A stretch of 64,000 nucleotides of DNA, taken from contig CDMY01000435.1 in assembly GCA_001179505.1 (NCBI GenBank), positions 1-64,000 on the forward strand. The letters are read 5' to 3'. The position numbers were made by a program, and so were the translations under genes. Within the stretch, counting starts at the first letter, position 1, and each line of letters starts with the position of its first letter. This stretch comes from Vitrella brassicaformis CCMP3155 (lineage: Eukaryota; Protista; Chromerida). The notes under the pieces were generated by a model. That model had not been told where the DNA came from. It saw nothing but the letters and a program-made list of their open reading frames with translations, and did not search any database. This document shows positions 12,795 to 36,128 of this stretch, piece after piece.

Positions 12795-15700
12795 ATGTCA
12801 GGCTCATCTTCTGACCCCTTCGACCTGACCATCGAGTCAGAGCACGCGGGCCTCTCAGAGGACGCGTCTCTCCGTTACGCCCGGCTGCTGCAGGAGCAAT
12901 ACGTGATGGAGTCAGGACAGAGCTTGGAGGATGCCTACGCGAGTTATGAAAAGGTGAGGAGATATAAAGGCGTCACCTCAACGCCGACCCGTTTCTTTCT
13001 CGTAGAGGCCCAACAATGAACCGAGCTCTTCGGCCGCCGCCGCCGCTGCTGCTGCGCCTTCCCCTTCCGACAACACCAGGAAGCCATCGATCGCGGTTTC
13101 CCGCAGTTGGCCCAGCAGTCTAAAAAGGAGGCCAAGCGTGGCCGGGACAACCGCAATCAGCCACTCAAGAGGGTGAGTGAGGAGCTATTTAAACCCATCT
13201 CCCATGCGCACTGACCTCATTCTCACTTGCAGAGCATGAGGCGCAAAACACAACCTGGGTCGTCTGCCGCTGCTGCGGCTGCCGCACCACCATCGCCAGA
13301 GGACACGGAGAGTGAAGGGGAGGGGTCTGAGGACGGATGGAAGGACGAACCGGTACTTCTTGCTTAGGAAGGATGATTCTCACGTGAACACACTTCCCTG
13401 TTTCCTCTTGCTACCTTGTGTTTTGCGATGTTTGTCAGGTTATTGGTGACGACAAGCTTCTGATGACACCTGAGGTTTTCGCCGCCACCTTCGAGGGGAT
13501 CACGGATGACGATACCACCGTCCAGCCCGAGGAGGAAGAGGAGGAGCTCGGCGAGCTGTATGAGAACTGCGTCGTGGACCCAGACGAATACATCCATGAG
13601 GAAGACGCGCCGTCCCCTCCCCCACACCCATCGTCTGCGTCCCCCACAACCGCACCAGCGCCCGTCTTCACTTCTCCCAACAACAAGATCCCGCTCCCTC
13701 ACCCCGCCCTGCGCACATTCAGGCCCCGCACCAAGGGCAGGGGCAACGCGTGGATCACGTCAACGGGCCTGCGGGAGGTGAGGCGGAGTGCCAGTGACGC
13801 GGGCAAGGAGGAGAAAGAGCGACTAGAGTCTGGAAGGTCGACGGGAGGTCCGTCGTCGGTGTCGAAAGCGTTGGGTGCTCAGCCGGGCCAGCTCCTGTTC
13901 ATCGTCATTGAGGTGGGCATTCCAGACGCACACAGGGTCCATCCTCTCTCCTGCACGCCCTCTCCCCTTTCTGTGTTGCCTACCTGTGCAGATTTTCCAC
14001 TATTTGTGGAAGCACTCGATGATCAAGGGCAGATGTGTGCCCCACATATGGGGACGGAGTCTCATGAAGGGCGACAAGAACTGGCCCGAGCCGGCACCGT
14101 GGCGGTTTCAGGACTTCCTCTACCAGATGATGGGCCCACACACAGCCGACCACAAGCGACTTGTGAGAAAAGACAACATCAAGAAATCGTATACTGCTTT
14201 CGAGATGTCTGTCCGTGGCCGTGGGTCCATTCAGGTCATCGTTGTTCCCGAGAGCATGACAAAGTGGCACTCTGCGAACCCCTACCAACGAAAACGGCAA
14301 TTCGCCGAACTCTTCGACTCGTTCTCCAATGTAACCTAACGACTCGACTCGCCACTCCCAGCGAATGGATGCTCTCGACTGGCTTGTCTTGTGTGCAGGA
14401 GATGAGAGATCGGCCGGACGTGTCCGTCATCAGACAGACTACCAACAACGGAGGCGTCGTCAAGACGTGTCACGAACTGAGGAAGCTCGGCTATGCTGCC
14501 GAGGCCGCCGATTGTGACCAAGGTGCCGGTCTGCTCGGAGACGTCAACACACACCCGCTGACGGTGAGCCTGAGCATACTTTCACCAAATTCATCGCCCT
14601 GGCCCAAATGGTCGTTCTCTCTTTCCTCTGCAGCAATGGACGCAGTTTGGACGCAACCCTGGAGAGGGCAACCACGAGCGCAACAAGTGGAAGCGGTATT
14701 ACTCGCGAGTCAAGAAAACATGGTCGTTCAAAAGTCCGAAAGGTAGGTATACAGACAGGGAATAATGCAGCACATGCAGGTGCATCCAACCATCGGCTGA
14801 GGTTCTTTGTTCTCGCAGAGGCCCTCCAATTCTACGACGTGTTCTGCTCATTCTCGAACCGCTATCGCCTCCCCGGCCTGCCAATGAGCGTCAAGACCTT
14901 CCTCGGCATGGTGTGGGACCAGTACAGCAAGGACGACCCACAACACGATCTTCCATCGATCGACAAGGTACGTAGCTGAGGCACAACACGAAATGTCTGA
15001 GGGATCTATCCCCTGTTGTGTCTGTGTGGTGTGTGCAGGTCATGAGTTGGTTGATTGTGCCTCCCGGCGTCGACAGGGCCGAGTTGACCCAGGATCTCAA
15101 GAGACTCTGGCTTTACATCCGATGTCAGGGCGTGTACCCCGTCTGCGTCCACCCTGACACCGGCAAGGTAAGAGACGACCCTTCAGACGAATTGCCTTTA
15201 GTTGCTTCTGCTCTCCGATTCAGGTTGTGTCTGACACGTCACGCAAGGTTCCCCTCTCCGACTTCCCTCCTGGCTACTCCGAGGCCGACCTGCTCGAGAT
15301 CCCTCCCCGCGACAAGTATCGCCATCTTCGCGCTCCCCAGGACCCCCACCGCGCTCCGCGCACTCGCATCAGCCTGCTGAGGACCGCCATCCGCAAGACA
15401 GCGAAACAACGGTACGAGGAGTACCAGAAGCGAGAGATCGGCCACGTCGAGAAGGCCATCGAGGAGACCAAGAACGAGTCGGTCAACGTCGACAGCATCA
15501 CCCTTTCCAGGGGGGTTGCCCGTTCCAACTCCCACGGTCAGACGGGAGGATGGTTCTCACGGCATTCGACGTGTCAGCGTCATTTCGGCAATCACCTGCA
15601 CGGCGGAGAGAAGGGGGCGCTGCTGGCGGCCCTGGAGTGCAGGTTGCGGCACCTGCAGGGCCATGGGTGTCCAAAGTGCAATGACGGGGGGTCAGGGTGG

Positions 15701-16363
15701 GAGGAGTTCCAGAAACGGGAGACTCAGAGGCTGAAGGTCGAGCGCATCGACAGTTTCATCCAGGTGGTCGAGGCCGCAATACGTGATGGACGGCAAGAGA
15801 CCCCTCCCCATGGGATTGGAGTTTCCCACGTGCCTCCGTCGACATGGGTACGAACAGAAACACATCACGTGCATTCGTGGAAATCCGACCCATCAGTCGT
15901 ATCATACTGTTTGCGTGCAGCGCATGTCCCACAAGGAGCACGGTCGACCGCGATGTGAGATTCCGTTCACTGCAGGCACGGTCTCCTACCCCACCAGCAT
16001 GGAGGCTCTCCTGCGCAAACGGCAGCACGCAGTCGAGGGCGGGTGCGACGAGTGTGCGCCGTCGGCTCGCATGCATGACAACGAGGAGGCAGGGCCCCAG
16101 CTCACGAAACGGAATCGAAGGATGATGACGAGCATCGACGCTGCACTAGAGGTGATCGACAACGGCGACGTGCCAACGTCTCTCAAGAACACAGGGTGCT
16201 CACTCGATTCGGCCAAAAGGGGCGTCATCATGAAGCACGAGCGCAACAAAAAACGTGCCAAAAGTGGTTTTATTGGGGCACCAGCCGTACTAAGCTGCAA
16301 GCAATTCGGGACGCTCTTCTGCTCAAGAAATACCATCTGCCGGGCACGACGTGTTGTCGATGA
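12795..16363 (+). pseudogene. Multi-exon gene ending in three tandem AP2-like His/Cys repeats; the 3' part carries two apparent frameshifts
   Basis: Spliced exons from MSGSSSDPF (12795). Terminal region has repeats at ~15510-15680, ~15820-16070 and ~16190-16360, with frame breaks near 15790 and 16254. The second break is a 1-nt loss relative to the 59.4-kb paralogue. Confidence 0.55.
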
Positions 16364-29310: not shown

Positions 29311-29691
29311 CACTTCACACAGAGCAAACAGGAAGCCATGAACGCGAAGTTGCACTTGAGAAGATAGCCACATACACTATTCTGCGGTTCAACCGTCGAA
29401 TGTGGGTTCGATCTGGAACTAGAGTGTCACGACACAATGAATGTAGCCGCGATATATATGAAGCGCTTCTTGCTTTGGTCATCCTGAGACACCAATGCTC
29501 GTGCACGTTCTCTGGAGAAGAGATGACACACTGGATGCCTGGCTGAGCAGCAAGCCAGTCAGCTGTCCATGGAGCTGATGAAGCACAAAACGTTCCGGGG
29601 GCGAGTCGTGCACAACTTGCTGCGGCCGCCAGAGGGCCACGGACGGCCAGCGCGTTTCCCGAGGACTTCGTCAGCCGCGGGCCATATAGGC

Positions 29692-29757
29692 CACACACCA
29701 GCCCGCTCCGGGGCTGTGAGGAGGGGGCACACACCAGCCCGCTCCGGGGCTGTGAGG
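29692..29757. repeat. 30-bp direct repeat with 36-bp period
   Basis: cacacaccagcccgctccggggctgtgagg at 29692-29721 and 29728-29757. Confidence 0.95.
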
Positions 29758-30155
29758 GGGCTGGCTGGATCTGGATGCTGTGTGTGATGTGGTGCATGCC
29801 CTAAGCCTGTTTGCAGTGTTGAGACATTCATTGTATGCAGTCAGAGCGCGCTAGCGTTGTTCACTGGCGTTGACAACGTTGAATACTGATTTATATCCAG
29901 TTTGTATTGCTCCTTTTGCTTGATACGAACTGGTGCCTAGACGAACTTCGTCGCGTGTCCATGTTTTTGCTCAGTGAAACATCATGAATGGTGGAGACAG
30001 CCCCCCAGAATGTCTTTGGTGGTCAAGGAGGACAAACAGATACCACGCGACTGTGATAGTCAGGACCTGGTCTTATGGAACACACATGCATGTACTCACT
30101 TCTCTCTTTGTCTCTCCGTTATGACCACGATCGACATTAATGCAATTTTGCCACT

Positions 30156-33100
30156 CTAGGTCAGCATGCGCTCAATCGCCGACCGCGGGTCAGCATCACG
30201 CAACACAGCCTCAGACAGAATCACCCCGTCGGCACCTGAGAGCAACCAAAAGCAGGCAGACAGATAAGGAGCCATGAATCATGAGCGACATGTTTGCGGA
30301 CCGGCGCTGACGACCGCCCTCAGCTCCTCGGCGGTATCCACCCCTCCTTCAGATAGCACAAAGATCTCTCTGATGAATCAGACAAACACACGGTTGCAGG
30401 AATCGTGGGGGCTGCCGTCGACCCCTGACGCACTCACTTTTCCTTCAGGCGCCTTCTCATTTCGTCTGTGAGCAATCGAGTCGTTCTGAAAGGCAAGCAG
30501 CCCCCGGGGTCCAGCCATGGACTTCTGGTTCGTGTCTTTGCTAAGCACCTGTGTACATCGGGTTGCATATCCCAGAAGTTCAGATTATTAATGGCGACGA
30601 TTTTGCAGCCATCCAGCCGGAGACATCGCTCAAGCTGCTCGCGGGAGCTGACGCTGACGATCGCTTGCACCGATATGCGCTCGCACACTCTGCAAAGACA
30701 CCAGGTGGGCGACATCGTCCCTGTCTGCTTTTGGTGCAGTGCTCATTGCTTACTTCAGGAAGGCTTGCAAGTCACGGTCAGACAAGACAGCAGCAACCAA
30801 CTGCAATAAAATAGAAGGCAGGGAGCGAATGCTAGTGTGTGCAATGCGTTTACTTTGACTGCATCCGCACCAGCGAGCCGCGCACGGACAATCTGAGGAA
30901 CCAACACAACTGACGAAACTCCCTTTCGGTTCGCCCTCCTCCGGTGCTCGTTCGTCCCTTTGCCTACTTGCCAGGCGTATACGAATATGTCACTGGCGAT
31001 GATTGGCACAGTCGATCCTCTTCGTGCCGCACCCAAGTCGTCAAAATTCCCAGCGTAGTACCTAACGCAGTTGAGCATGTGCAGATTCAAGTCCCTTGTT
31101 GCGCATATAAAAGGCTGCCTGCCTGAGTTCTCACTTGTTATCAATGTGAACCGACACTGCGGCCACGCCCCTCCTCTCCCCACCGTCGGCGTATGTGCTT
31201 GCGATGGCCTTTGGGTCGTACTTGGCCTTGAGAATGCCGTGATTAGGAGACGCCTTCATGCACTCCCCCACCAGCGCCACGCCTCTCTCGGCCTTCTGTC
31301 GACATAGCGAGCCGTAGAGATCCCTCGGGCGGTTGGCCGGGCGGAGGTTGTACTCGCCGACTTGGTACATGAGATTTGACATGGGGTATCTGTCCCTCAG
31401 ACGATCCACTTCCATCTCCTTGCTCCAGACCATCTCCTCCAATCTGATGCGGCAGACAAACAGACATGCCAGCTGCTTTCTGCCTGCCACACGTCTGTCC
31501 ACGTGCATCCCACGTTGACGCACCTATGTGAGGGCAGCGGTGCCAGCTCAGGCAGGCTGAATTCGATTGTGCTGATGCTCACAGGACGGGCTACATTCAC
31601 CAGGCGCCGGGGTAGCTGCAACACCACGCAACGCGAGTGGCAGCGCTGTGGAGTGTCCACCCTCTCTGGTACCCACCGTGATATCTGGATCGGGATTGTC
31701 AGGCGAATAGTCGACTTTTGAAGTGAATGGTGACACCATGAAGGAGCCTCCCCGTTGCCTCTTTATCTCTCTCAGTCTCGCACGGGTTGTCTCGTTCATA
31801 GGGGTGGACGCACGCGTCCTGTCGGGGTTCTTCGGACCAATCTCAACAAATAGCGAACAACTCCCGTACTGCATCGAATAGACATGCCAGCCCAATCACG
31901 ACGATTGCCCGTCATACTTTGTGGGTGCCTGTGTGATGACCAGGTAGGTGTTCCCGCCCTTGATCATGGGTCCGATAGCCCCGTCGCCAAAAAAACCCAT
32001 TAAAGGGCCGTCATAGCCCCACTCACGCAGCTTCTCCACCTCATAGTTGCCCTTGCCAAACAGCTTGCGGCCGCGATCTAGACCTTTCAGGACAAACAGG
32101 CCCTCCGGACGAAATGTGGCGTCCTGCCATCCCCAGAAGAGTGACAGACGCCACGTGCCAGCTCATGTTCCGTACGTGTCGACCTCACATGGTGAGTGTA
32201 CCTACTTCATCCAGGTCGTAGGCGAGCCTCTGAAGTGTTTCAGAGAGGTCGACCTGCGCACCGTACATATCTCTCACATAGAAACGCATCGTCTGTCCCT
32301 CCTGTATGGGCTGCTGGATCAGCAGACCGCCTTCACGAAAGCTGGCCTTGGGCAGCTGGTGAGCACACCACACAATCGACCGCGACATCTCATCTCTCGC
32401 GGTATGTGTGTACCTCCTCGACGAGGTATCTGCTCGAAGCGGCTGATGATGCTTGAGACACATCGGAGGGGGACGGTAGCTGCATGGGGACCTGCATATT
32501 ACATGGCCGGTTACTGGTGTCAAGTTCTTGGCAGTCAAGCCGGTTACCTGTTCGACTCCCAGCATGGTTGCCTTCTTGATGAGATTGGCATCGGTGTCGT
32601 CCAACTCATACGTCAGACGCGTATACTCACTCCAGGGACTGAGGCATAACAGACGGAGCACCAAAAACCATATAGGAAACATCTACTCTTCACTTCGTGT
32701 GCTTTCCATGACTCGATCGGCACGGTGTCTGCGGCTCCGACGCCGTCCTCGCTCATTCGTTTTTCAGCGTTCGCCCCCTGTAGAGCGGCGAAGGATTGCG
32801 CAGTCTCGGACAGCTCCTCCAGGTCCACCATCTTCTGTGGTGATGGCGGCTCATCCTTGAAAATCTCCACGATCTTGTGCGGCTCGCACTTGGTAATACG
32901 GAATCGATCACTGACTGGACGGCAACCATGGGCGAGGCGAGTGCGGACCTGACAAACAAGGAGGATATGTGCTTAGGCACCGGTCGTCATGTTTTCCGTG
33001 TGCATACATCTATATCTCCGACGAGCATGAGGCCGATGAGGCCATCCTGTGCGAAGGTGTCGAGCGATATCTCACCAGCAGGAACGTTCTCGGGCCACAA

Positions 33101-34078
33101 TGCTGTCATGTTGAAGTTTGAAGAGGATGACATGGCACTGCAACCATACCGACGCATGGATGAATCAGTGCATGAGGGCGTTGTCCCTGTTACCTCCATG
33201 CAAATATGGCCGGACTGCTGCTGGCGCCAAAGGTGCTTGCCAGGCCACCAACTTTCTTGGACTCCGGGTAGGCCTGATCCAACCCAATGATGACATTGTC
33301 AAGGCCCTGAAGCCGCATGAATCGGGGGGTGCTGTACATGAAGAAGAGGGGCACGTCTGACGGGGGCACACCCAGGTAAGAGATCCAGTCTTCAGCGGGG
33401 TCGAACTTGTCCGGTATCTCAGATGCCAACCTGATACAGCCCACCGAAGCATAAATCATCTCCCTGCACATATGTCCCTCGCCCTTTCAGCGGTTACATC
33501 TGGAAGGGTTTGATGGTGACATCAGGCAGACTGGCCAGCGTGACCGACACAGATGGAACACCCTCTGCCTCCTGTGCTTCCCCTGGTTCCTCCCTCTCCG
33601 CAGATCGTCCGATGTTCCCCCCCGTCGTCGTTCCAATGATCGCCTTGACATCAGGGAGCATGCGCCTCATCTGGGGCACCAGACCGTCCCACTGGAACTT
33701 GCTCGAGTACAGACTGCAAGCATGAACGATGGCAAGATCGGGCGTCACCCCCTGTGGCAGCTGACTCCTTGCTGCCTCCACTGCATCTGCCGTTGCATCT
33801 GTCAGGTTGGCCTTAAGACTGAGGGCCGAAGACCATCTTTGGGGAACCGAGAGGGACTGCGCAGTCGGCACGCTCGCCGGAGGTACAGAGGGCGCAGAGG
33901 AAGGCGATGGACTGACGCAGCTCAGTGAGCGAGACGATGTGACCCGGCACGGTCCACGCAGATGAGCGGATGAGTCGTCATGACGGGGCGCCAGCCTCAG
34001 ATGTGAACCGAGGGGGGAGAACCCGAGGGCAGAACAGATGAAGGCTGAATGCAGGAAAAGAAGAGGTGGGATCTCCAT
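30156..34078 (-). CDS. FIST_N-FIST_C domain protein fused to a degenerate indole-3-glycerol-phosphate synthase (TrpC) fold; bipartite plastid-type leader
   Basis: FIST: PDLAIVHACS, IIGTTTGGNIG, GLDQAYPESKKVGGLAS, AHGCRPV, MRFYVRD, LMGFFGDGAIGP. IGPS fold: LEEMVWSKEMEV, VGECMKASPNHG, PIIASDIFVYAWQ, GADAVK|LVAAVLSD, VAINNLNF, VLSEGGV, GADGVILSEAV...ERMLT*. Confidence 0.8.
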
Positions 34079-34133
34079 GGCGCTCCCTGCTTTGGGGTTT
34101 GACGGCACAGCTGTCCTAAGCTCGAGTGGAGCA

Positions 34134-36128
34134 ATGGAGCCTCTGGACGTGTGCATGGTTGGGACGGGGGAGTACACGACGGGTTACGTGCCTGGTCTTG
34201 AAGCGGCGCCGGATAAACGCGTGGGAGTCGTTGGCCTTGTTTTGTTTGACCTCCGGAGGCGGGGAGTGGTTTCCTCGCTCAGTATGGTGGGTACGAGTGG
34301 AAGGAAGTTCGCCGCGATTCGCGACCACCTCCAGAAAGGAATCGCAGAGCAGTACCGTGACATGGACGTCACATGCGACACGTTCCCGGCTGACGGCATT
34401 GACAGAGATCCGCAGGCCTACAAGGCGGCCATTGACGCGTTAAAGCCAGGTATTTACCCATGGCCACATCGGCGGGAAGGGTCGGGGTCACACATGGGTA
34501 TTACTTGAGTGCAGGGTCAGGCTGCTGCATCTTCACTCCCGATGATACCCACTTCGACATCGCCATGTATGCCGTCGAGCGCAAGTGCCACGTGCTGGGT
34601 AAGCACGCACACGAGGCAGCTGTGTCATGCAGTCCCACAGTTTATTCTTGCAGTAACGAAGCCTGCTGTCATGACGGTGGATGAGCACATCAAGCTGAGG
34701 GATGCGGCGAGAAAGGTGGGATCGACTCGCATGCACCGAGCGGGAGCCTACTGCCCGTCACTTTCGTCTCTCTCTATGTGGTGTGTCCGATCAGTACAGA
34801 GTGTTGGTCCAGATAGAACTTCACAAGAGATGGGACCAAATCTATGCAGACGCGAGAGAACGGATACGCTCATACGGTAGATGTGCCACTGCATACGACT
34901 TCGATAAAGCATGATTGTGCTGGCTCATCAGGCGATTTTACATATTTCAATAGTTACATGAGTCAACCGCAGAGCCAGCTGCAGACGTTCAAGGCATGGG
35001 CAGGAAAGTAGGCAAACGACAACCTACACGAAGCGATTAGAGGCAGAGTTATCGAGCGCGTGCCATACCTGCGCAGGTCATCTGACATCAGCTACTATCT
35101 GAACTCTCACCACATGGACATCCACTGCTGGGCCATGCAGGGCAGAGCCGTGCCGGTCAAAGTGACGGCTTTCGGATCGACGGGAGTGGCGTCGGGAAAA
35201 TACGGTGAGGCGCAGACACCACTTGCCAGATGTCTTTTATTGTTTGATCCTTTGTCTAGGGTGCCCTCCGAATACCGAGGACGTCATCACCGTTCTGTCT
35301 GAGTGGAAGAATATCCCTTCTGGTAAGAAGCTGCGCCGTATGGCATTGTGCTGATCGCAGCTGTTCCTCATGTAGGGAACAAGGGGATTGCAGTGTATAC
35401 TGCTGCGTGGACGGCACCAGACAACGCGGGTAGGTGCACAGACACGGACACGGCAGTGTACGTCTCAAATGCTCCATGCCACGCGCCTTAGAGGTCCACT
35501 CACAGCAGCGCTTTCAGTGTCTCTGCCACAATGGAGAAGTCAGGGTGAGCAGATACACACTAAACAGACAGGGGCAGTGGCTGCGTCGATGGGTGCTGCT
35601 GCAGGCTGACCAAGCTCATCGGGGCTACGAGGTCACAGCTGATCGAAAGTACATGAGCGTCAACCCCATGTACATGAAATACACCAGAGGTCAGCCACTG
35701 CGAAATGTGGTTTGCCTACCAGAGGCTTACCCTGTGCCCATTTCACTTCTCGTCAGACTCTGCTGGCTACTACGCCGGTCAGCGTGGATATGGTTACCTG
35801 TCGATTGAGACATGGGTCAACGCATGCAGGGATCTCAACCATGGAAGTGAGCATGTGCATACACAATGGCAAGATTCACTGCGCCATGTACGGCTTGGCC
35901 GAGCAGAGAAAACGCTCGAAGAATGCCACGCGACCCTGCCAACTCTCGAAACGACACTGGAGGTCAAGAGCAATATCTCTCTGAAACGCGGGATGGCCAC
36001 AATTGTGTGCATGTGCTGCATATCTGTTCGTTCAGCTAACAGCGTTGCTCGAGGCTGGTCGCCGCTCTCTGGACGACAACGGAGCCAGTATCGACGTGCA
36101 GAAACTCATAAAGGGGGAGGAGCGGTAA
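34134..36128 (+). CDS. gaaA: NADPH-dependent D-galacturonate reductase-like oxidoreductase (Gfo/Idh/MocA, GaaA type)
   Basis: LDVCMVGTGEYTTGYV, VGVVGLVLFDLRRRG, IFTPDDTHF, YMSQPQSQLQTFKAWAG, SDISYYLNSHHMD, GQRGYGYLS and ALLEAGRRSLDD match the fungal GaaA family as I recall it. Confidence 0.85.

What the first reader, a model, noticed from the sequence alone, without database searches (positions are those of the whole stretch)
30156..34078. Plastid-type leader + FIST sensor domain fused to a catalytically dead IGP-synthase (pseudo-TrpC) barrel
Seen: complete FIST_N and FIST_C motifs are followed by an open linker (31548-31895). Two phase-consistent introns (...PDIT|LPRR...PSHR|LEEMVWSKEMEV) then join it to a full TIM barrel of plant/cyanobacterial IGPS type. 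Established (S. solfataricus numbering): IGPS needs K53, K110, E159 and R182. Here ExKxxSP reads ECMKASP (K53->M), LRKDF reads IASDIF (K110->S), LVEVH reads IVSVS (E159->S), NNRNL reads NNLNF (R182->L), and the phosphate-binding VGE reads LSE. The leader MEIPPLLFLHSAFICSALG|FSPL is a signal peptide plus Phe, the bipartite red-plastid signature. FIST domains include the haem/NO sensor NosP. Inference: a plastid sensor or scaffold made from a ligand-sensing domain and a pseudoenzyme, possibly regulating tryptophan synthesis. I know of no description of this architecture.
Basis: partly seen in the sequence, partly recalled or inferred. Interest (0 to 1): 0.88.

Follow-up and report, generated by a model that had tools for sequence, protein, structure and literature searches.

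The report
FIST-fused dead IGPS: published gene Vbra_5810
This is one real, expressed 18-exon gene of the alga Vitrella brassicaformis (Vbra_5810) that joins a FIST ligand-binding module to a tryptophan-enzyme-like barrel without its catalytic residues; the dead barrel was published in 2019 as a relative of the malaria plastid-biogenesis factor AMR1, but I found no paper that discusses the FIST half.

Summary
RNA contigs from three runs splice 17 GT..AG introns into one 931-aa ORF on the minus strand (ATG 34078, stop 30156-30158). This includes the predicted donor after NTYL, whose intron removes the in-frame stop. The ORF is identical to database protein CEM12188.1 / A0A0G4FH55 of Vitrella brassicaformis.

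The claim that nobody has described it is only half right. Cloning primers in Tang et al. 2019 (PLoS Biol) match this gene's start and stop exactly. It is Vbra_5810, one of two Vitrella "IGPS-like" homologues of PfAMR1, an essential apicoplast-biogenesis factor, and it failed to complement E. coli trpC.

New here: the "large N-terminal extension" is a FIST module. The fusion forms one clade across chromerids and ochrophytes with a shared signature (K110 and E159 always lost). Full-length members carry a signal peptide followed by Phe. Whether apicomplexan AMR1 hides a FIST module could not be tested. The function remains inferred.

The parts
30156..34078 (-). Coding region of Vbra_5810, ATG to TAG: 18 exons, 931 aa
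   Evidence: RNA contigs and joints. The spliced ORF is identical to P0001 = CEM12188.1. The published cloning primers match 34057-34078 (-) and 30156-30176 (+).
29657..34084 (-). Transcript as assembled. Exons in + coordinates: 29657-30235, 30302-30369, 30438-30485, 30549-30689, 30754-30800, 30854-30892, 30968-31061, 31135-31443, 31524-31615, 31677-31868, 31941-32123, 32206-32355, 32414-32491, 32548-32638, 32713-32948, 33008-33137, 33194-33430, 33498-34084
   Evidence: All 17 introns are GT..AG and 53-82 nt long. X6 record 7 spans the whole transcript.
33842..34078 (-). Bipartite plastid-type leader, aa 1-79. A hydrophobic signal peptide ends ...CSALG|F (Phe20 at 34019-34021). It is followed by a Ser/Pro-rich, net-basic, disordered stretch.
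   Evidence: Kyte-Doolittle maximum 1.9 at aa 6-17, and the same SP+Phe in Chromera and ochrophyte relatives; aa 20-80 have 18 S/T, 10 P, 5 K/R and 2 D/E; pLDDT <50 for residues 1-64.
32862..33709 (-). FIST N domain, aa 124-345, spread over exons 1-4
31968..32613 (-). FIST_C domain, aa 404-553, spread over exons 5-8
   Evidence: Pfam PF10442, E 2.9e-7, above the curated cut-off.
31869..31940 (-). Intron 8 (72 nt). It contains the in-frame stop after ...YDGQSS, and its removal joins the FIST half to the IGPS-like half.
   Evidence: The joint 31868|31941 occurs in X1, X2 and X6 with 182 nt on the shorter side.
31532..31868 (-). Family-conserved connector, aa 563-654. It holds the last FIST strands, a helix and disordered loops.
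   Evidence: Linker HMM E 1e-19 to 1e-32 in all full-length fusion members. Secondary structure.
30168..31442 (-). IGPS-like (beta/alpha)8 barrel, aa 658-928, spread over exons 11-18
31257..31259 (-). Met719 at the position of catalytic/substrate Lys53 (S. solfataricus numbering)
   Evidence: Alignments; codon.
30992..30994 (-). Ser783 at the position of the general acid Lys110
30653..30655 (-). Ser832 at the position of the general base Glu159
30581..30583 (-). Leu856 at the position of Arg182

Best explanation
The locus is Vbra_5810 of Vitrella brassicaformis. It is one expressed nuclear gene whose 931-aa product has four parts:
- a signal peptide plus Phe and a transit-peptide-like leader for the four-membrane red-type plastid;
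- a complete FIST_N/FIST_C module;
- a conserved connector;
- a well-folded IGPS-derived TIM barrel.

The barrel cannot run the IGPS reaction, because the general acid K110, the general base E159, K53 and R182 are all replaced. The protein belongs to a monophyletic FIST-IGPS-like family of chromerids and ochrophytes. This is the same 'IGPS-like' group that Tang et al. 2019 tied to PfAMR1.

Shown: gene structure, expression, domain folds, residue losses, family conservation, and the published failure to complement trpC.

Inferred: it acts inside the plastid, not in tryptophan synthesis. It probably acts as a metabolite-binding protein in which the FIST module and the barrel's remaining pocket (E51, N180, E210 and the G212 loop are kept) bind small molecules. 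That binding would feed into plastid biogenesis or maintenance, as AMR1 does in Plasmodium. In the chromerid copy the extra loss of K53 and R182 makes a non-catalytic binder or scaffold more likely than a re-tooled enzyme.
For: - Single spliced transcript and ORF.
- Identity with Vbra_5810: the primer sequences from the supplement of PMC6380595 match the gene's first 22 and last 21 nt uniquely.
- Residue losses.
- Family signature: canonical IGPS reads EKKENRES at E51/K53/K110/E159/N180/R182/E210/S211. Most fusion-type proteins read EK[S/T]xSREG, and none keeps K110 or E159. Vitrella reads EMSSNLEG and Chromera QMDKDVEG.
- The fusion-type barrels are one split with 100/100 support.
- The barrel is as conserved as the FIST half: 36% versus 36% identity to Chromera, and 35-37% to ochrophyte members. 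It is therefore under constraint.
- Leader motif conserved in relatives.
- Literature: the Vitrella IGPS-like genes did not rescue E. coli trpC9800, while canonical Vbra_4894 did (PMC6380595). AMR1 loss causes apicoplast loss and an isoprenoid defect.
Against: - No localisation, ligand or phenotype data exist for the Vitrella protein.
- In the published complementation, protein expression could not be verified.
- Orthology to PfAMR1 specifically, rather than to the second Vitrella paralogue Vbra_14040, is untested here. I could not fetch any apicomplexan AMR1 sequence.
- Most family members keep E51, K53, R182 and E210. The family as a whole could therefore still be an enzyme with new chemistry, and the chromerid copy could use other residues.
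- The relative orientation of the two domains in the model is not validated: the best AFDB full-length match superposes with rmsd 23 Å.
Confidence: 0.8

Rival explanations
1. The barrel is a neofunctionalised enzyme rather than a pseudoenzyme. It catalyses a different reaction on a phosphorylated substrate, and the FIST module regulates it allosterically.
For: Most family members retain E51, K53, R182, E210 and the Gly-rich phosphate loops. The barrel is as conserved as the FIST half. Tang et al. propose a new biochemical function for AMR1. The AMR1 knock-down changes MEP-pathway intermediates.
Against: The Vitrella and Chromera copies additionally lose K53 and R182, and Vitrella changes G233 to Ser. 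Little of the ancestral pocket chemistry is left. No activity has been shown for any member.
Confidence: 0.3
2. It is still an IGP synthase, a sensor-regulated TrpC that uses alternative catalytic residues.
Against: Four essential residues are replaced. Vitrella has a separate canonical IGPS, Vbra_4894, which complements trpC, whereas this gene did not.
Confidence: 0.03
3. The fusion is an artefact: two adjacent genes (FIST and IGPS-like) merged by assembly or read-through.
For: Contigs alone cannot prove a single molecule. An in-frame stop follows YDGQSS if intron 8 is retained.
Against: Three independent run assemblies splice 31868|31941 in frame with at least 182 nt on each side, and one contig covers the whole mRNA. 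The same architecture occurs in Chromera, Chrysoparadoxa, Corethron and many metagenomic proteins, and in an atlas cluster of 70 members. The connector itself is conserved.
Confidence: 0.02
4. The FIST module is a NosP-like haem/NO sensor, so the protein is a plastid NO or redox sensor.
For: From general knowledge, NosP is a FIST-family haem protein. The FIST fold is intact here.
Against: Nothing tested here points to haem. The only solved relative found by sequence or fold is FBXO22, a protein-recognition FIST domain. No NosP structure or sequence was available to check haem ligands.
Confidence: 0.07

Closest known systems
'IGPS-like proteins' / AMR1 (PfAMR1 = PF3D7_1363700; Tang et al. 2019, PLoS Biol, PMC6380595)
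   Same: This very gene, Vbra_5810, is one of the two Vitrella IGPS-like homologues analysed there. It has an IGPS-derived TIM barrel, has lost its catalytic residues and does not rescue trpC. PfAMR1 also has a signal peptide and a long N-terminal extension (790 aa in total, PMC3637116).
   Different: [quoted passage not shown] FIST is never mentioned. Whether PfAMR1's extension is a FIST module, and whether Vbra_5810 or Vbra_14040 is its orthologue, is unknown.
[quoted passage not shown] 6y88, 1pii, 3qja, 1igs)
   Same: Same fold, including the N-terminal helices (rmsd 1.6 Å over 263 residues). Pfam PF00218 matches at 133 bits. E51, N180 and E210 are retained.
   Different: K53->M, K110->S, E159->S, R182->L, S211->G and G233->S. 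It is fused behind a FIST module and carries a plastid leader. A separate canonical IGPS exists in the same genome.
FIST domain proteins (PF08495 + PF10442): bacterial signalling inputs, NosP, eukaryotic FBXO22
   Different: The output partner is not a kinase, cyclase or F-box but a catalytically stripped metabolic barrel. The ligand is unknown.
FIST-IGPS-like proteins of ochrophytes and Chromera (Cvel_19631 / A0A0G4G1G1; Chrysoparadoxa CAM9359691.1; Corethron hystrix A0A7S1C009; Pinguiococcus)
   Same: Same domain order, a conserved connector, the same loss of K110 and E159, and the same SP+Phe leader where the N-terminus is complete.
   Different: Most keep K53 and R182 (signature EK[S/T]xSREG). 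Only the Vitrella/Chromera pair has lost them as well.

Membership tests
IGPS (TrpC) as a homologous family / fold | (beta/alpha)8 barrel with the IGPS-specific N-terminal helices; PF00218 above its gathering score | tested here: met
IGPS (TrpC) as an enzyme | General acid Lys110 and general base Glu159 (S. solfataricus numbering) | tested here: not met
   Ser783 and Ser832.
IGPS (TrpC) as an enzyme | Substrate-binding Lys53 and Arg182 | tested here: not met
   Met719 and Leu856.
IGPS (TrpC) as an enzyme | Rescues a trpC mutant / converts CdRP to IGP | not testable with these tools
   The published test was negative for the Vitrella IGPS-like genes, but expression was not verified (PMC6380595).
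FIST | FIST_N (PF08495) and FIST_C (PF10442), both above their gathering scores | tested here: met
   49.8 bits against 23.2, and 31.1 bits against 28.5.
FIST | FIST fold | tested here: met
FIST | Binds a small ligand (or haem, as in NosP) | not testable with these tools
   No ligand-site reference was available. The PDB holds only FBXO22 as a relative.
AMR1 / IGPS-like (Tang et al. 2019) | IGPS-homologous barrel lacking the catalytic residues, listed by the authors as a Vitrella IGPS-like gene | tested here: met
   The Vbra_5810 primers match 34057-34078 and 30156-30176 exactly.
AMR1 / IGPS-like (Tang et al. 2019) | Orthology to PfAMR1 / TgAMR1 and a role in plastid biogenesis | not testable with these tools
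   No apicomplexan sequence could be retrieved.
Bipartite leader of complex red plastids (ASAFAP-type) | Signal peptide, Phe at +1 of the predicted cleavage site, then a hydroxylated, net-basic transit peptide | tested here: met
   ...CSALG|FSPL; aa 20-80 have 18 S/T and a net charge of +3 and are disordered. The motif is conserved in relatives. This rests on sequence inspection only; no dedicated predictor was run and there is no import assay.

The most novel reading that the evidence does not exclude
The unexamined N-terminal extension of apicomplexan AMR1 is a diverged FIST module. PfAMR1 is 790 aa, with a signal peptide and about 450 residues ahead of the barrel, which is the size of FIST_N+FIST_C. 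If so, AMR1 and Vbra_5810 belong to one ancient FIST-IGPS-like fusion family restricted to lineages with red-derived complex plastids. In that family a FIST ligand sensor, coupled to a stripped IGPS barrel, controls plastid biogenesis. That would give the first mechanistic handle (a ligand-sensing input) on an essential, parasite-specific apicoplast factor.
Probability: 0.35. Interest if true: 0.7.

Novelty: already known. Interest (0 to 1): 0.42.

Why it matters
AMR1 is essential for apicoplast biogenesis in malaria parasites, and its biochemical function is still unknown. Here its free-living algal relatives turn out to be uniform FIST-IGPS-like fusions. They share a defined residue signature (K110 and E159 always lost; E51, E210 and usually K53 and R182 kept) and carry plastid leaders.

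This turns "a TIM barrel with an extension" into a two-module ligand-binding protein. It suggests concrete experiments: ligand screens on the FIST module and the barrel pocket, and a FIST test on PfAMR1. It also offers tractable algal and diatom models.

For genome annotation, the automatic name "indole-3-glycerol-phosphate synthase" on this protein and its relatives is wrong as a statement of function.

Tried and rejected
- All three word-indexed homology searches (whole protein, family alignment A1, region 655-931) returned almost only the query. They gave no taxon-named relatives and no apicomplexan AMR1.
- The single exhaustive HMMER job, run with the 103-aa barrel exon, found the family but no Plasmodium or Toxoplasma sequence at E<=1e-3.
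- The ESM-atlas feature searches, the atlas shape search and AFDB clusters showed no apicomplexan cluster. That means nothing either way, because small clusters are not searched.
- The sequence search of the FIST half against the PDB gave only FBXO22 at E 0.35, so a NosP comparison was impossible.
[quoted passage not shown] The Leucomyxa TrpF-TrpC pseudo-enzyme (PMC11528492) is a different protein.
- I considered a decaying pseudogene and rejected it. The 931-aa ORF is intact across 18 exons, the gene is expressed, and the barrel is as conserved as the FIST half.
- I considered an alternative 47-nt intron near 33138. It arose from my misreading the ruler; the single intron is 33138-33193.
Full report
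**1. What is in the sequence**

The region 30156-34078 encodes a minus-strand gene. Stop-to-stop ORF pieces already give weak FIST, FIST_C and IGPS hits.

Five public runs hold about 55-59% of the sampled words of the locus, as expected for spliced RNA. Three runs hold all of them and are DNA.

Laying contigs of X1, X2, X6 and X8 on 29500-35000 gave eleven explicit joints. The piece coordinates allowed the remaining six to be fixed from record lengths plus CT..AC ends.

- All 17 introns are GT..AG on the minus strand and 53-82 nt long.
- X6 record 7 (3375 nt) covers 29657-34084 in one piece and retains only intron 32639-32712.
- X1 record 1 and X2 record 4 independently cross the critical joint 31868|31941, with at least 182 nt on each side.
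- That intron (31869-31940) contains the in-frame stop after ...YDGQSS.
- The spliced mRNA has one ORF of 931 aa from ATG 34076-34078 to TAG 30156-30158.

**2. Identity**

An exhaustive HMMER search with the 103-aa barrel exon returned a 931-aa protein, P0001. It is identical to my RNA-derived model. It is CEM12188.1 / UniRef100_A0A0G4FH55 of Vitrella brassicaformis CCMP3155. It is auto-named 'indole-3-glycerol-phosphate synthase' and has PF08495, PF10442 and PF00218 precomputed.

A literature search led to Tang et al. 2019 (PMC6380595). A forward screen in P. falciparum identified AMR1 (PF3D7_1363700), an IGPS-like TIM-barrel protein essential for apicoplast biogenesis. The paper states that V. 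brassicaformis has one canonical IGPS (Vbra_4894) and two 'IGPS-like' homologues without the key residues. Only Vbra_4894 rescued E. coli trpC9800.

Their primer table (supplement file 5) lists 'Vbra_5810 Forward' and 'Vbra_5810 Reverse'. The gene-specific parts match the window uniquely at 34057-34078 (-) and 30156-30176 (+), which are this gene's first and last bases. The caveat is that expression could not be verified.

[quoted passage not shown] 'FIST' occurs nowhere in that paper. It also does not occur together with IGPS or the apicoplast in any relevant paper of the searchable library.

**3. Domains and fold**

On the full protein, Pfam gives:

| Domain | Residues | E-value |
|---|---|---|
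| FIST | 124-345 | 4.9e-13 |
| FIST_C | 404-553 | 2.9e-7 |
| IGPS | 658-928 | 1.2e-38 |

All three are above their curated cut-offs.

An AlphaFold2 model built on a 48-sequence alignment has mean pLDDT 80.7 and pTM 0.72. Residues 1-64 are disordered.

- Residues 76-580 match a cyanobacterial FIST+FIST_C cluster (TM 0.87 over 417 residues).
It contains the last FIST strands and a helix.

**4. Catalytic residues**

HMMER alignments to solved IGPS structures and two family alignments agree on the following, in S. solfataricus numbering:

| Position | State in Vbra_5810 |
|---|---|
| E51 | kept (E717) |
| K53 | M719 |
| K110 | S783 |
| E159 | S832 |
| N180 | kept (N854) |
| R182 | L856 |
| E210 | kept (E890) |
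| S211 | G891 |
| G233 | S913 |

**5. It is a family, not a one-off**

Proteins of 675-1026 aa with the same FIST - connector - IGPS-like order are present in several taxa:

- Chromera velia (Cvel_19631);
- the ochrophytes Chrysoparadoxa australica, Corethron hystrix (a diatom) and Pinguiococcus pyrenoidosus;
- many unnamed marine metagenome and transcriptome proteins;
- an ESM-atlas cluster of 70 members (IGPS 100%, FIST 81%) that is mostly Bacillariophyta;
- two full-length AFDB cluster representatives.

In a maximum-likelihood tree of 40 barrels, the fusion-type sequences form one split with 100/100 support. Vitrella and Chromera are sisters with 100/97 support. The root, and hence the donor lineage, is unresolved, so 'plant/cyanobacterial type' is not shown.

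Across all fetched proteins the eight key positions read EKKENRES in canonical IGPS. In most fusion-type members they read EK[S/T]xSREG, and none of them keeps K110 or E159. The chromerid pair is further stripped: EMSSNLEG in Vitrella and QMDKDVEG in Chromera.

The barrel is nevertheless as conserved as the FIST half (36% versus 36% identity to Chromera, and 35-37% to ochrophyte members). This argues against decay.

**6. Targeting**

The N-terminus has a hydrophobic core (aa 6-17) ending ...CSALG, followed by Phe20. Next comes a Ser/Pro-rich, net-basic, disordered stretch up to about aa 80.

The same signal-peptide-plus-Phe arrangement is seen in:

- the full-length Chromera transcript (…CLA|FSPV);
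- Chrysoparadoxa (…AHG|FAMAP);
- P0004 (…GAS|FD);
- P0131 (…VSG|FQSP).

From established knowledge this is the ASAFAP-type bipartite leader of complex red plastids. No predictor or import assay was run, so plastid location is inferred. PfAMR1 likewise has a signal peptide (PMC3637116).

**7. How it most likely works**

Shown: a two-module, folded, conserved, expressed protein with a plastid-type leader and a barrel that cannot perform IGPS chemistry.

Inferred: it works in the plastid outside tryptophan synthesis. Vitrella has a functional Vbra_4894. IGPS-like genes persist in tryptophan-auxotrophic apicomplexans and disappear with the plastid in Cryptosporidium. AMR1 depletion causes apicoplast loss and MEP-pathway imbalance.

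The most economical mechanism is that FIST binds a small ligand while the barrel's residual pocket binds a second metabolite. That pocket keeps E51, N180, E210 and the Gly loop, plus K53 and R182 in most relatives. Binding would then be coupled to a plastid-biogenesis step. For the chromerid copy I favour a non-catalytic binder or scaffold. For the wider family a re-tooled enzyme remains a serious rival.

**8. Novelty and score**

The gene, its dead catalytic site, the failed trpC rescue and the AMR1 link are published. The three-domain architecture already sits in public domain annotations.

This analysis adds four things:
- an RNA-verified gene model;
- the explicit recognition that the 'extension' is a complete FIST module;
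- the family-wide signature and its distribution in chromerids and ochrophytes;
- the conserved leader.

The attractive open question is whether apicomplexan AMR1 (790 aa) hides the same FIST module. It could not be tested, because no apicomplexan sequence was retrievable. I rate the finding as already known in kind, of moderate interest because of that untested extension.

Noticed in passing
window 29689-29760: There is a perfect-register tandem duplication of a 36-nt GC-rich unit (GGCCACACACCAGCCCGCTCCGGGGCTGTGAGGAGG, second copy 94% identical) at the far 3' end of the assembled transcript. RNA contigs show single-C insertions behind 29701 and 29737, and several contigs break here (loose ends at 29704-29786). 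The cause could be a polymorphic or collapsed repeat, or a paralogous sequence.
   Followed up: partly
window 34084-34121: A neighbouring gene lies head-to-head. The Vbra_5810 transcript contigs end at 34081-34087 and the + strand neighbour's contigs begin at 34121, leaving about 36 nt between divergent transcripts. This looks like a very compact bidirectional promoter. The neighbour has GT..AG introns at 34447-34511, 34598-34652, 34714-34792 and 34876-34930 and 3-4 times higher contig depth. Its first exon has no Pfam hit.
   Followed up: partly
window 32639-32712: The X6 contig retains this 74-nt intron, which would break the frame inside the FIST region. X2 splices it out. It is either a minor unspliced isoform or pre-mRNA.
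   Followed up: partly
window 29500-29683: Contig depth is 3-5 times higher here than over the Vbra_5810 body in all runs. This suggests that the 3' end of another, more highly expressed transcript abuts or overlaps the long (~500 nt) 3' UTR.
   Followed up: no
window 15480-16363: Another first-stage note on this window reports three tandem AP2-like repeats with extra His/Cys. That would fit an alveolate (ApiAP2) genome. I did not examine it.
   Followed up: no
P0132 (786 aa, metagenome): This is a GATase-IGPS-PRAI trifunctional protein with the canonical EKKENR signature. It turned up as a distant hit and is an ordinary fungal/protist-type Trp fusion, unrelated to the FIST family.
   Followed up: no
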